A stretch of 64,000 bases of DNA, taken from the NCBI GenBank assembly GCA_964057225.1, contig OZ059895.1, forward strand, positions 7,130,001 through 7,194,000, written 5' to 3'. Below the pieces are notes generated by a model. The model was given only the letters and a program-made list of their open reading frames with translations. It had not been told where the DNA came from and made no database searches. The DNA is from Auanema rhodensis (lineage: Eukaryota > Animalia > Nematoda). A program made the translations under genes and the position numbers. Shown here piece by piece: positions 4,960 to 7,050 of the stretch; position 1 is the first letter of the stretch; the number at the start of each line of letters is the position of its first letter.

Positions 4960-5220
4960 TTTGGTTAAAATATAAGATATTTAATACTTATTTATCAAGC
5001 TTGGCTTTATTTAAATCTGGCGCTTAACATGCCAGCCAGGACCATTTTTTAACACCCTTTAACAATTAACACTAAATCATTAACATTTTTTTCATAGACT
5101 TTATTAATTAAATCATGCAAACATTAATACAACAAATAATTGGTACTGTATAAAAAAACAAAAATTCTAACAAACTATTGAAGATGCTATAATTACATAA
5201 AACAAGGACTAAAATACCTA

Positions 5221-6220
5221 TTAAGCTTTTTTCTTTTTCGGCAAACGCACCTGTGGATGAATTCTTCTCAATGTGTTTATATAAATATATCTGAAAGATA
5301 CGAGATAACCTTCTTTCAAAAAAAAAAAACGTTTTCGAATTATTTATAGAATAGTATTCAAAAGGTGATTGAGTAGTAACTCTATTCACTTTCAACTCAC
5401 CGAGAAAAAAGCATGAACAAAATTCGAAACCAAACTAGCTGTGACCTATGAGACGCCATAGCATTCCAACAAGCAATAATATCACGACCCCAGGCAAAAT
5501 AACGGTAGGGGGAACGAAGAACAGAAATTGGGGAATCAAATAAACCAATATATCTGAAAAATAAAAATAAAAACGGAAACAGATTAAAGTAAGACTTTCT
5601 CCATAGAGGGACAGACTCTAAGACAAAAATCTGAACATCTTGTGGAATAACGCCATTTGTATAGGCGTCTTGCAAGGCCTCAAAGCAAGATATGTGATTA
5701 TGATGACCAGAGACTCCATAACCATCAAATGAAATGACACAATCAACATCTAATATCTATAATAATTTAATGAGTTTACAACACTGCTAAAACTAAAAAA
5801 CCTCCATATGCCTCAAAATGATATTACTCATGGATACTTTCTCCCATTCTTGTCCATCTTGAAACATATCATAATCTAGAATAGTGACATCTCCTGGTAG
5901 TACACCAAGATACTGAACAGCCTTTTGCAACTCTCTGCTACGAAGAGAACCCTTAAGAAAACATTGGCATATATAATATACGCTAAACTGACCTGTCCAT
6001 AAAAATTTCCATTAGAAACACAAAGCATAAAAACACGATGACCAGAAAGTCGTAAGGCACGTAATATAGGAGAAAAAAACATAGTTTCATCATCAGGATG
6101 AGCAATAACAAGCAATATACGAGAAGTTGATGAAAGAGGTAAGGGTCGTCCACCACGAAAAGAGAATAAAAGCAGAATTATTAGCAAGAGAAGAATCAAC
6201 AGAACAATTATAGGAATCAT
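5221..6220 (-). CDS. pigl-1: GlcNAc-PI de-N-acetylase PIG-L (GPI biosynthesis)
   Basis: N-terminal TM segment; catalytic motifs LLVIAHPDDETMFFSP and SFDGYGVSGHHNH; HRSQLVWFR..FSRYIYINTL. Five exons, ending KKKKA*. Confidence 0.95.
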
Positions 6221-6222
6221 TA

Positions 6223-6789
6223 TTACTGCTTTTCTGCTGGAGCAGAGATAGTAGATTCGTCTTTTTTCTCTATACTATTGATCAAATCCTCAAAACTTTG
6301 AGAGTTTTTGCTTTGAGGTAATCTTAAGGAATCTCCGAAGGATCTTTTCATCGCTGAGCCAAACTGGCGAGGAGTGTTTACGTCGAGTATCCAAGATACA
6401 CCTACCACAAACAAGGAAAAGCCAGAAACTGCAAAGAGCACACATTTGAGGTCACTTAGTTTAACTGACCAGTAATAAGAGTAGAAATAGCTAAAGCTTT
6501 GGAAGCGAATCCTACACCTGATACTAACTGAGCTCTTGCCAAATCAGCTGCTTCCTTATGTCTTGTATGCTTATATGCACTTCTTATCCCAAATACCAAT
6601 GAGGTGAATGAAGCAACACCAAGTACTGAAACATATTTTATCTAGCGTTATAAGGATTATAAGCGCACCTCCTTTCACAATAGTTGAAGAGATTTTAGAG
6701 TCAACACTATCAGCAGCACGCGCAACGGAACGGAGGGTGGATTGGGTAACAGATCCCCCTAATTCCTCCTTTACAGAAGCATTCTCCAT
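6223..6789 (-). CDS. TMEM242 (DUF1358) mitochondrial membrane protein
   Basis: Three exons: ...LGAASFTSLVFGIRSAYK...SGVGFASKALAISTLITG|SGFSLFVVGVSWILDVNTPRQFGSAMKRSF. Resembles TMEM242 'SGSSLALRALGWGSL...[28 protein letters not shown]'. Confidence 0.75.
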
Positions 6790-7050
6790 ACACTAACTGA
6801 CAAAGGAACCCTCAAAAACATGGTATATGCACAGATACACTTGCAATTTTAAGTAAGAATGGATAAACCAAACTTAGACAAATCTTGAAAGACTGAACAA
6901 AGACTTTATTACATTTTCATATAACAAAATAAGCTTTGTAGCATATCATAACAAGGACTAAGAGACCAAATTACTTAGGGATTTCAGGAATTCAAAATAC
7001 ATGTGATATTAGTTTAGCTTCTGTGATGTGCACGAGATCAAAAAAACAAA

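What the first reader, a model, noticed from the sequence alone, without database searches (positions are those of the whole stretch)
6200..6260. TMEM242 and PIG-L are joined stop-to-start (CAG-TAA-TA-ATG): candidate true dicistronic mRNA inside a nematode operon
Seen: on the minus strand the TMEM242 stop (6225-6223) is 2 nt from the PIG-L ATG (6220), and a second in-frame TAA overlaps that ATG (TAATG). The next in-frame Met lies right after the catalytic HPDDE motif, so this ATG must be the real start. There is no room for a 3' UTR, poly(A) signal or the ~100-nt intercistronic region, while the neighbouring junctions of this cluster have ~260-nt gaps. Known: nematode operons are normally cut into monocistronic mRNAs; UAAUG is a viral termination-reinitiation junction; a mitochondrial ORF plus a GPI-pathway ORF on one mRNA has a precedent in human PYURF-PIGY. 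Inference: either (a) PIG-L is made by reinitiation on an NMD-resistant dicistronic mRNA, or (b) an acceptor hidden in the TMEM242 CDS (tatctctgctccAG, AG at 6238-6237) is trans-spliced, making the two products mutually exclusive per transcript.
Basis: partly seen in the sequence, partly recalled or inferred. Interest (0 to 1): 0.85.

Follow-up and report, generated by a model that had tools for sequence, protein, structure and literature searches.

The report
Conserved nematode TMEM242–PIG-L dicistronic mRNA
In this Auanema-like nematode, a mitochondrial membrane protein (TMEM242) and the GPI-anchor enzyme PIG-L are encoded 2 bases apart on what looks like a single spliced mRNA. The arrangement is kept in C. 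elegans and Brugia, and the first reading frame is almost free of AUGs, as expected if ribosomes scan through it to reach PIG-L.

Summary
On the minus strand the TMEM242 stop (6225-6223) lies 2 nt before the PIG-L ATG (6220), inside one exon.

In four RNA runs, one contig per run covers both ORFs with all six introns removed. Contigs break at the two ordinary ~80-110 nt operon junctions on either side.

The pairing is old. Auanema JU1783 has TAATG, another rhabditid RNA contig has TGATG, and Pristionchus has ATGA. Brugia has a 24-nt spacer, with RNA contigs across it. In C. elegans, F28D9.4 has a splice donor directly after its stop, cis-spliced over 6.25 kb to an acceptor 35 nt before the PIG-L ATG. 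One such contig starts with an SL2-family leader remnant.

Where the genes are linked, the TMEM242 ORF holds 1-3 internal ATGs (6-9 expected; PIG-L has 16-22). In three clade-IV-like lineages where they are unlinked, it holds 7-14.

Best reading: a real, conserved dicistronic mRNA nested in an SL2 operon. PIG-L is probably reached by leaky scanning, possibly helped by reinitiation.

Not shown: single-molecule continuity, translation of PIG-L from this mRNA, or absence of trans-splicing at a cryptic acceptor (AG 6238-6237).

No paper on this pair was found. The scan noted another candidate dicistron elsewhere in this genome.

The parts
6811..6816 (-). Likely SL trans-splice acceptor and 5' end of the dicistronic RNA (tttttgAG|G; AG at 6812-6811)
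   Evidence: The dicistronic contigs end at 6816 (X1, X2) or 6812 (X3, X4) in four runs. TTTGAG is shared with the SL1 3' end (from memory). The upstream gene's contig ends at 6941/6893, after AATAAA at 6910.
6223..6789 (-). TMEM242/AIM11-family ORF (160 aa). Exons 6789-6669, 6625-6470, 6428-6223. AUG context GUGUAUGG
   Evidence: Splice joints; translation. Orthologues are named TMEM242 / F28D9.4. Atlas score 0.95. Only 2 internal ATGs against 9.1 expected.
6780..6782 (-). Out-of-frame AUG at +8, opening a 3-codon mini-ORF
   Evidence: The same ATGGAGAATGC start occurs in Auanema JU1783 and Brugia.
6349..6351 (-). The only internal in-frame AUG (Met119, G at -3). It opens a 42-codon ORF that ends at the TMEM242 stop
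   Evidence: It is the single internal Met in all 14 clade V/III orthologues listed.
6218..6225 (-). Stop-start junction TAA TA ATG (TAATAATG), followed by TGA, giving three in-frame stops for ORF1
6237..6238 (-). Candidate cryptic trans-splice acceptor (tatctctgctccAG|CAG), 17 nt before the PIG-L ATG. Untested
   Evidence: 9 of 11 upstream bases are pyrimidines, the best AG in the last 200 nt of ORF1. There is no loose end there, but contigs clip such tips.
5221..6220 (-). PIG-L (GlcNAc-PI de-N-acetylase) ORF, 253 aa. Exons 6220-5993, 5951-5802, 5756-5596, 5553-5401, 5290-5221. AUG context AAUAAUGA
   Evidence: Pfam PF02585. Orthologues at 60-85% identity. Splice joints.
5100..5105 (-). Shared poly(A) signal AATAAA for the dicistronic RNA
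   Evidence: Contig 3' ends lie at 5146-5099. Depth is 0 in 4973-5063, before the next gene.
5992..6428 (-). Shared exon carrying the end of TMEM242 and the start of PIG-L
   Evidence: One continuous piece, 5992-6428, in all four runs with 0 mismatches and 0 gaps.

Best explanation
TMEM242 and PIG-L are expressed from one mature mRNA. That mRNA is itself the second unit of an SL2-type operon: PWI/rsr-1-like gene, then TMEM242+PIG-L, then the next gene. Its 5' end is made by SL trans-splicing at about 6811. All six introns are removed, and it is polyadenylated after PIG-L (AATAAA 5105).

TMEM242 is translated from the first AUG, which sits in a non-A context. A fraction of 40S subunits passes that AUG and scans an ORF that selection has kept almost free of AUGs, so reaching the PIG-L AUG (A at -3). 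This is leaky scanning.

Ribosomes that start at the tiny +8 mini-ORF, or at the single internal Met119 (a 42-codon ORF), stop next to the PIG-L AUG and may add to its translation by reinitiation.

Shown: the sequence, the spliced RNA path, the conservation and the AUG scarcity. Inferred: that single molecules span both ORFs, and that PIG-L is translated from them.
For: (1): in each of 4 RNA runs, one contig of 1349-1396 nt spans 6816/6812 to 5146-5099. All introns of both genes are removed and 5992-6428 is continuous. The same runs give depth 0 and contig ends at the ordinary intercistronic regions on either side, which serves as an internal control. Word depth is 173 against 132 for the upstream gene.

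(2): there is no AATAAA between the TMEM242 stop and 5105, so TMEM242 mRNA has to run through PIG-L.

(3) Conservation. Auanema JU1783 has TAATG. RNA contig L020 has TGATG. Pristionchus has ATGA. Brugia has a 24-nt spacer, with at least 7 RNA contigs across it and a promoter region of its own. In C. elegans the donor follows the F28D9.4 stop directly and is cis-spliced over 6.25 kb to an acceptor 35 nt before the PIG-L ATG, seen in 4 RNA contigs. One of these, L006, starts with TTAACCAAG, an SL3-type leader remnant, 4 nt before the F28D9.4 AUG.

(4) AUG desert. Internal ATGs in ORF1 number 2, 3, 1, 2 and 2 in linked lineages, against 6.4-9.1 expected. PIG-L has 16-22. Only 1.3% of 482-nt genome windows have 2 or fewer. 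In unlinked lineages (B. xylophilus, L022, L023) the counts are 7, 14 and 13. The rates are 0.42 against 2.61 per 100 nt.

(5) There is exactly one internal Met in 14 clade V/III orthologues, against 2-4 in clade IV. The median is 3.5 in distant family members.

(6) AUG scarcity in ORF1 is the published signature of leaky-scanning bicistrons in green algae and in Drosophila stoned/Snapin (PMC11892635).
Against: Contigs are k-mer paths, not molecules. Logan contigs clip SL and poly(A) tips, so a trans-spliced PIG-L mRNA would be invisible. Two C. elegans contigs also run across an ordinary rsr-1/F28D9.4 intercistronic region.

Fully cis-spliced dicistronic processing intermediates are known from an ordinary Brugia operon (PMC1657053).

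The AUG depletion sits at the amino-acid level. Codon shuffles expect only 2.2-3.7 ATGs. Linked versus unlinked also coincides with clade, so there are few independent events.

A pyrimidine at -3 of the first AUG also occurs in two of the three unlinked controls, so start context does not discriminate.

Met119 has a good context (G at -3) and would capture many scanning ribosomes.

There are no translation data.
Confidence: 0.55

Rival explanations
1. PIG-L protein comes from a separate monocistronic mRNA. An SL is trans-spliced at a cryptic acceptor in the last codons of TMEM242 (AG 6238-6237 in the window; the intron acceptor at -35 in C. elegans and at -66 in Brugia). Each pre-mRNA then yields either TMEM242 or PIG-L, and the dicistronic RNA serves only TMEM242.
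For:: tatctctgctccAG is the most acceptor-like AG near the junction. Similar pyrimidine-rich CAG motifs lie 8-21 nt before the stop in JU1783, L020 and C. elegans. C. elegans, Brugia and Haemonchus each have a genuine 3' splice site just upstream of the PIG-L ATG that could also accept an SL. Nematodes routinely resolve co-transcribed genes this way. SL tips would be clipped from Logan contigs, so their absence means little.
Against: It does not explain why ORF1 is kept AUG-poor only where the genes are linked. Pristionchus has no acceptor-like AG within about 30 nt of its ATGA overlap. The 35-nt C. elegans spacer has no G at all. Every RNA contig seen (4 window, 4 C. elegans, 7 Brugia, 1 L020) passes through the junction, although SL remnants can survive at contig ends (L006). 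Internal acceptors with an upstream cis donor are normally cis-spliced.
Confidence: 0.25
2. Pure termination-reinitiation. Ribosomes translate all 160 codons of TMEM242, terminate at UAA, and the 40S restarts at the adjacent AUG, as at viral UAAUG/AUGA junctions.
For: Stop and start overlap or nearly touch in the window (+2), JU1783 (TAATG), L020 (TGATG) and Pristionchus (ATGA).
Against: Spacers are 24 nt (Brugia), 35 nt (C. elegans) and 202 nt (Toxocara). No UGGGA lies in the last 200 nt of ORF1. No structure is seen at the junction (z = 0.23). Whole-ORF AUG depletion is not needed under this model. Reinitiation after a 160-codon ORF is normally very inefficient (established knowledge).
Confidence: 0.12
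3. The dicistronic RNA is only a processing intermediate or the TMEM242 mRNA. PIG-L is made from transcripts that start at an internal promoter, or the close spacing is an assembly or annotation artefact.
For: C. elegans has a 6.25-kb intron that could hold a promoter. Contig L007 ends exactly at the F28D9.4 stop, so other isoforms exist. Spliced dicistronic intermediates are documented.
Against: The window leaves no room for a promoter. The junction is confirmed by RNA in four runs with no mismatch and is conserved in several genomes. The depth of the dicistronic contig is at least that of the neighbouring mRNA, while true intercistronic regions have depth 0.
Confidence: 0.06

Closest known systems
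Cellular dicistronic mRNAs translated by leaky scanning (Drosophila stoned and Snapin; green-algal bicistronic loci)
   Same: Two unrelated conserved proteins lie on one transcript. ORF1 is short, its start context is non-optimal, and there is a marked lack of AUGs before ORF2 (PMC11892635; here).
   Different: Here the dicistron sits inside a trans-splicing operon, in an animal that could resolve it with an SL. In C. elegans it is assembled by a 6.25-kb cis-splice that starts right after the ORF1 stop. Translation has not been tested.
Human PYURF-PIGY bicistronic mRNA (from memory: Murakami et al. 2005; co-mentioned with 'bicistronic' in PMC13303939)
   Same: The upstream ORF is a small mitochondrial protein and the downstream ORF acts at an early GPI-anchor step, both on one mRNA.
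   Different: The genes are different (preY/PIG-Y versus TMEM242/PIG-L) and the origin is independent. There is no evidence of a functional link between the two products.
Nematode SL2-type operons
   Same: The cluster around the pair behaves like one. Genes are on the same strand, gaps between poly(A) site and acceptor are about 80-110 nt, and RNA contigs break there. The C. elegans orthologue carries an SL2-family leader remnant.
   Different: The TMEM242/PIG-L junction has no intercistronic region, no 3' UTR and no poly(A) signal, and RNA does not break there.
SL1-type operons of C. elegans (from memory: Williams et al. 1999) and Ciona operons without intercistronic regions
   Same: There is no spacer between the two genes, so the products could be mutually exclusive per transcript.
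   Different: Those have a 3' UTR with AAUAAA before the trans-splice site. Here the stop codon is 2 nt from the ATG, and the only candidate acceptor lies inside the upstream CDS.
Viral termination-reinitiation junctions (UAAUG/AUGA with TURBS)
   Same: UAAUG, UGAUG and AUGA overlaps occur in Auanema JU1783, L020 and Pristionchus.
   Different: There is no UGGGA motif or structure upstream. The spacing is not conserved (24-202 nt in other nematodes).

Membership tests
PIG-L (GlcNAc-PI de-N-acetylase, PF02585) | Pfam PIG-L domain above the gathering score, with the HPDDE motif | tested here: met
   38.1 bits against a cut-off of 28.2 on exon 1. AHPDDE is in the translation. Orthologues are named PIG-L at E down to 1e-122.
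TMEM242 / AIM11 (PF07096 DUF1358, PF28272) | Match to the family profile | tested here: inconclusive
   The window protein has no Pfam hit. The C. elegans orthologue hits DUF1358 at E = 0.015, below the cut-off. UniRef names the orthologues TMEM242. The Atlas feature score is 0.95 to the TMEM242 and AIM11 clusters.
Cellular dicistronic mRNA (leaky-scanning type) | One mature transcript carries both complete ORFs | tested here: met
   Met at contig level only: window; C. elegans, including the cis-splice joint; Brugia; L020. Single-molecule proof is lacking.
Cellular dicistronic mRNA (leaky-scanning type) | Scarcity of AUG codons between the ORF1 AUG and the ORF2 AUG | tested here: met
   1-3 ATGs against 6.4-9.1 expected. 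Unlinked orthologues have 7-14. The depletion is at the amino-acid level, not the synonymous level.
Cellular dicistronic mRNA (leaky-scanning type) | Weak start context at ORF1, stronger at ORF2 | tested here: inconclusive
   ORF1 has (G/U)UG(U/C)AUG with no A at -4..-1 in the window, C. elegans, Brugia, L020 and Toxocara. PIG-L has a purine at -3. But two of three unlinked controls also have U at -3.
Cellular dicistronic mRNA (leaky-scanning type) | ORF2 protein is made from the dicistronic mRNA | not testable with these tools
   This needs ribosome profiling, reporters or proteomics.
Nematode SL2-type operon junction | Intercistronic region of about 100 nt with upstream poly(A) signal and downstream SL acceptor | tested here: not met
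   The spacer at TMEM242/PIG-L is 2 nt, with no AATAAA. The feature is met at both flanking junctions.
SL1-type operon | Upstream 3' UTR with a poly(A) signal that ends at the downstream gene's trans-splice site | tested here: not met
   There is no 3' UTR. Only a variant AATAAT overlaps the junction (6224). The candidate acceptor lies inside the CDS. SL use itself could not be tested.
Termination-reinitiation with TURBS | UGGGA-type 18S-complementary motif within about 100 nt upstream of a stop-start overlap | tested here: not met
   On the minus strand between 7100 and 4900, TGGGA occurs only at 6591 and 5846. There is no stable structure.

The most novel reading that the evidence does not exclude
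Across clade III and V nematodes, PIG-L, an essential GPI-anchor enzyme, is made mainly or only by ribosomes that first pass through the TMEM242 reading frame on a naturally unresolved dicistronic mRNA. This would be a case of conserved, translated dicistrony in animals that otherwise resolve every operon by trans-splicing. It would tie the output of an ER enzyme to the translation of a mitochondrial assembly factor.
Probability: 0.4. Interest if true: 0.75.

Novelty: new member of a known kind. Interest (0 to 1): 0.62.

Why it matters
Nematode operons are the textbook case of polycistronic precursors that are always cut into monocistronic mRNAs. A dicistron kept for the whole divergence of clades III and V would be a natural exception. 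In C. elegans it is even rebuilt by a dedicated 6.25-kb cis-splice.

It would give a genetically tractable system (F28D9.4 / PIG-L gene in C. elegans) to study leaky scanning, reinitiation and NMD evasion in vivo.

There is also a practical side. Many nematode annotations are wrong at this locus. Examples are fused TMEM242-PIG-L models in Haemonchus, Necator, Nippostrongylus, C. auriculariae, Anisakis and Dracunculus, and a truncated PIG-L model in Auanema JU1783.

The pairing of a small mitochondrial membrane protein with an early GPI or glycosylation enzyme recurs in human PYURF-PIGY. This may be chance or may hint at a shared logic.

Tried and rejected
- Pfam on the window's ORF1 gave no hit. 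Its identity had to come from orthologue names and the Atlas.
- Start context as a discriminator: my first reading of the B. xylophilus context was wrong. Its -3 base is U too, so the -3 base does not separate linked from unlinked lineages.
- Synonymous-site selection against ATG: codon shuffles expect about what is seen. The depletion is therefore in the protein sequence.
- RNA structure at the junction: none (z = 0.23).
- TURBS-like UGGGA: absent.
- SL remnants in the Brugia contigs: none found.
- Gene-level SL tables: the supplements of two long-read trans-splicing papers hold neither gene name.
- Literature: 'F28D9.4' gave 0 papers. 'Y52B11C.1' gave 1 paper, found by name only and not read; its title concerns the Brugia GPI-anchored proteome. 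The TMEM242/elegans and dicistronic/nematode searches gave nothing on this pair.
- Steinernema locus look-up failed, so it is unknown whether this clade IV genus, which has a single internal Met, keeps the linkage.
- Readthrough or frameshift fusion was rejected: three in-frame stops (TAA TAA TGA) follow ORF1.
Full report
**Observation.** On the minus strand the sequence reads CAG TAA TA ATG.
- The stop of a 160-aa ORF is at 6225-6223 and the ATG of PIG-L at 6220-6218.
- A second TAA overlaps the ATG and a TGA follows, so ORF1 is closed by three in-frame stops.
- I built both gene models by eye. Every intron was then confirmed by RNA joints.
- PIG-L is secure: PF02585 above threshold on exon 1, an AHPDDE motif, and orthologues at 60-85% identity that start at the same Met with the same membrane anchor.
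- ORF1 has no Pfam hit of its own. Its orthologues are named TMEM242, or F28D9.4 in C. elegans. The C. elegans protein touches DUF1358 weakly. The ESM Atlas places it with the TMEM242 and yeast AIM11 clusters at 0.95.
- The closest database relative is Auanema sp. JU1783 (89% and 85% amino-acid identity), with the same gene order. The window is therefore from an Auanema-like rhabditid.

**RNA in the window's own species.** Four RNA runs of one study hold the locus.
- In each run a single Logan contig of 1349-1396 nt runs from 6816 or 6812 to 5146-5099. All six introns of both genes are removed. The exon 6428-5992, which carries the junction, is continuous, with no mismatch or gap.
- The same runs give separate contigs for the upstream PWI/rsr-1-like gene, ending at 6941/6893 after AATAAA 6910.
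- They also give separate contigs for the downstream gene. Depth is zero in the two ordinary intercistronic stretches.
- So the precursor is visibly processed at the normal operon junctions but not between TMEM242 and PIG-L.
- The contig 5' ends fit an SL acceptor tttttgAG|G at 6812-6811.
- There is no AATAAA between the TMEM242 stop and 5105. TMEM242 mRNA therefore has nowhere canonical to end before PIG-L.
- Caveats: contigs are k-mer paths, their depth is a flat mean, and short SL or poly(A) tips are clipped. This shows a continuous spliced RNA path, not single molecules, and it cannot exclude an SL-PIG-L isoform.

**Conservation.** Several annotated proteins are TMEM242-PIG-L fusions: Haemonchus, Necator, Nippostrongylus, C. 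auriculariae, Anisakis and Dracunculus. That suggested tight linkage elsewhere, so I read the loci.

| Lineage | Junction |
|---|---|
| Auanema JU1783 | caaTAATGtta |
| Logan RNA contig L020 (another rhabditid) | cagTGATGctg |
| Pristionchus fissidentatus | caATGAag |
| Brugia malayi (clade III) | 24-nt spacer |
| Toxocara | 202-nt spacer with no ATG in it |

- In Brugia at least seven RNA contigs from different runs cross the junction. The pair also has a divergent upstream neighbour, so it is a transcription unit of its own.
- C. elegans is the most telling case. F28D9.4 lies just downstream of rsr-1, as in the window, but PIG-L is 6.25 kb further on.
- The F28D9.4 stop is followed directly by a consensus donor (CAATAG|gtaaaa). 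A consensus acceptor (tttctttccag|) lies 35 nt before the PIG-L ATG.
- Four RNA contigs from four runs join these two sites exactly. The spacer they create has no G at all.
- One contig (L006) begins TTAACCAAG|GTGTATG. From memory, that is the 3' end of an SL3-type (SL2-family) leader, joined at the genomic acceptor gttgcag| 4 nt before the F28D9.4 AUG. It runs on through the cis-splice into PIG-L exons 1-2.
- A splice junction cannot be produced by overlapping separate mRNAs, so C. elegans does make a spliced RNA that carries the end of F28D9.4 followed by PIG-L.
- Another contig (L007) stops exactly at the stop/donor, so alternative isoforms exist.
- In Bursaphelenchus xylophilus and in two JGI contigs with clade-IV-like TMEM242 (L022, L023), the next gene is on the other strand and PIG-L is not there.

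**How PIG-L could be translated.** I counted ATG triplets between the ORF1 AUG and the PIG-L AUG.

| Group | Lineages | ATG count | Expected from base composition |
|---|---|---|---|
| Linked, ORF1 | window, JU1783, C. elegans, Brugia, L020 | 2, 3, 1, 2, 2 | 6.4-9.1 |
| Linked, ORF1 plus spacer | Toxocara (694 nt) | 5 | 12.5 |
| PIG-L CDS, same RNAs | window, C. elegans, Brugia | 16-22 | 11.5-14.1 |
| Unlinked, TMEM242 CDS | B. xylophilus, L022, L023 | 7, 14, 13 | 8.2-9.6 |

- Only 1.3% of 482-nt windows of this genome have 2 or fewer ATGs.
- The rates are 0.42 against 2.61 per 100 nt. A binomial test gives P about 1e-8 ignoring phylogeny, and a Mann-Whitney test gives P = 0.016.
- All 14 clade V/III proteins have exactly one internal Met, at the same FGxxM position. 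Bursaphelenchus, Panagrellus, Panagrolaimus, L022 and L023 have 2-4.
- Distant family members found with a profile have a median of 3.5.
- The few ATGs that remain in linked lineages are a +8 out-of-frame ATG opening a 3-5 codon mini-ORF, and Met119, whose 42-codon ORF ends at the ORF1 stop.
- This is the signature reported for leaky-scanning bicistrons in green algae and in Drosophila stoned/Snapin (PMC11892635).

Limits of the ATG argument:
- Codon shuffles that keep the protein expect only 2.2-3.7 ATGs. The depletion lies in amino-acid choice (Met replaced by Leu or Val), not in synonymous sites.
- Linked versus unlinked coincides with clade, so independent events are few.
- The ORF1 start context, (G/U)UG(U/C)AUG with no A at -4..-1, is conserved from Brugia to C. 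elegans. But two of three unlinked controls also have U at -3. I do not count context as evidence.

**Alternatives.**
- Pure termination-reinitiation fits the overlaps. It does not fit the 24-202 nt spacers. No UGGGA motif or structure is present, and it does not require an AUG-poor ORF1.
- Trans-splicing at a cryptic acceptor remains open. AG 6238-6237 is the best candidate. Related species have pyrimidine-rich CAG motifs or true acceptors just upstream of the PIG-L ATG. This model does not explain the AUG desert, and Pristionchus lacks any such acceptor near its ATGA.
- Fully spliced dicistronic intermediates are known from an ordinary Brugia operon (PMC1657053). That argues for caution. In the window's runs, however, the ordinary junctions are not covered at all.
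- A fusion protein is excluded by the three in-frame stops.

**Comparison and novelty.**
- The locus works like known cellular dicistrons of the leaky-scanning type.
- By gene content (mitochondrial small membrane protein upstream, early GPI enzyme downstream) it is reminiscent of human PYURF-PIGY.
- It is not an SL2-type or SL1-type operon junction, because the defining spacer or 3' UTR features are not met.
- I found no paper on this pair. I could not consult WormBase curation.
- I file it as a new member of a known kind. It has two unusual traits: it is nested in a trans-splicing operon, and in C. elegans it is assembled by a long cis-splice placed right after the ORF1 stop.
- Another candidate dicistron elsewhere in this genome was noted by the scan. 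I did not test it.

**Verdict.**
- Observation confirmed.
- A conserved dicistronic RNA is very likely (about 0.85).
- PIG-L translated from it, mainly by leaky scanning: about 0.55.
- PIG-L made from a cryptic trans-spliced mRNA: about 0.25.
- Interest 0.62.

Noticed in passing
L004:12693-12700 and L004:18940-18990 (C. elegans chr I): The F28D9.4 stop TAG is immediately followed by a GT donor. A 6.25-kb intron ends 35 nt before the PIG-L ATG, and the resulting spacer contains no G. Contig L007 ends exactly at the stop, which suggests an alternative unspliced or polyadenylated isoform.
   Followed up: partly
L017:6180-6520 (Haemonchus contortus): The TMEM242 stop TGA lies inside a consensus donor (CC|GTGAGT), and the PIG-L ATG lies 2 nt after an acceptor (tttatttcag|AC ATG). 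Splicing there would remove the stop and make the two ORFs overlap. The annotated 443-aa fusion (P0006) uses extra small exons and is unverified.
   Followed up: partly
P0006, P0008, P0014, P0023, P0034, P0041, P0003: Public annotations at this locus are often wrong. There are fused TMEM242-PIG-L proteins in six nematodes. In Auanema JU1783 the PIG-L model is truncated to the Met after HPDDE.
   Followed up: partly
window 6779-6789 (-); L008:6001-6011; L011:342-352: The first 11 nt of the ORF (ATGGAGAATGC) are identical in the window, Auanema JU1783 and Brugia. They create a second, out-of-frame AUG 7 nt after the first, with a 3-5 codon mini-ORF. This may be protein-level conservation (MENA) or part of the start-site choice.
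   Followed up: no
P0149 (Steinernema hermaphroditum TMEM242): This is a clade IV protein with only one internal Met, like the linked lineages. Its locus could not be fetched, so it is unknown whether the linkage to PIG-L is kept there.
   Followed up: no
window 6893-6812 and 5099-4972 (-): The ordinary operon junctions flanking the pair have gaps of about 80-110 nt between poly(A) site and acceptor. AATAAA sits at 6910 and 5105, and RNA contig depth is zero between genes.
   Followed up: yes
same genome, about 11.96 Mb beyond the window (scan note s1-397591): Another first-stage note describes a candidate dicistronic unit with an ATGA stop/start overlap in a shared exon. If real, tight dicistrons may not be unique to this locus in this genome.
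   Followed up: no
L009 and L018 (Brugia, Pristionchus): In both, an AP-3 beta (apb-3-like) gene lies downstream of PIG-L on the opposite strand. The upstream neighbour differs from the rsr-1-like gene seen in Auanema, C. elegans and Haemonchus. The pair moves as a unit.
   Followed up: partly
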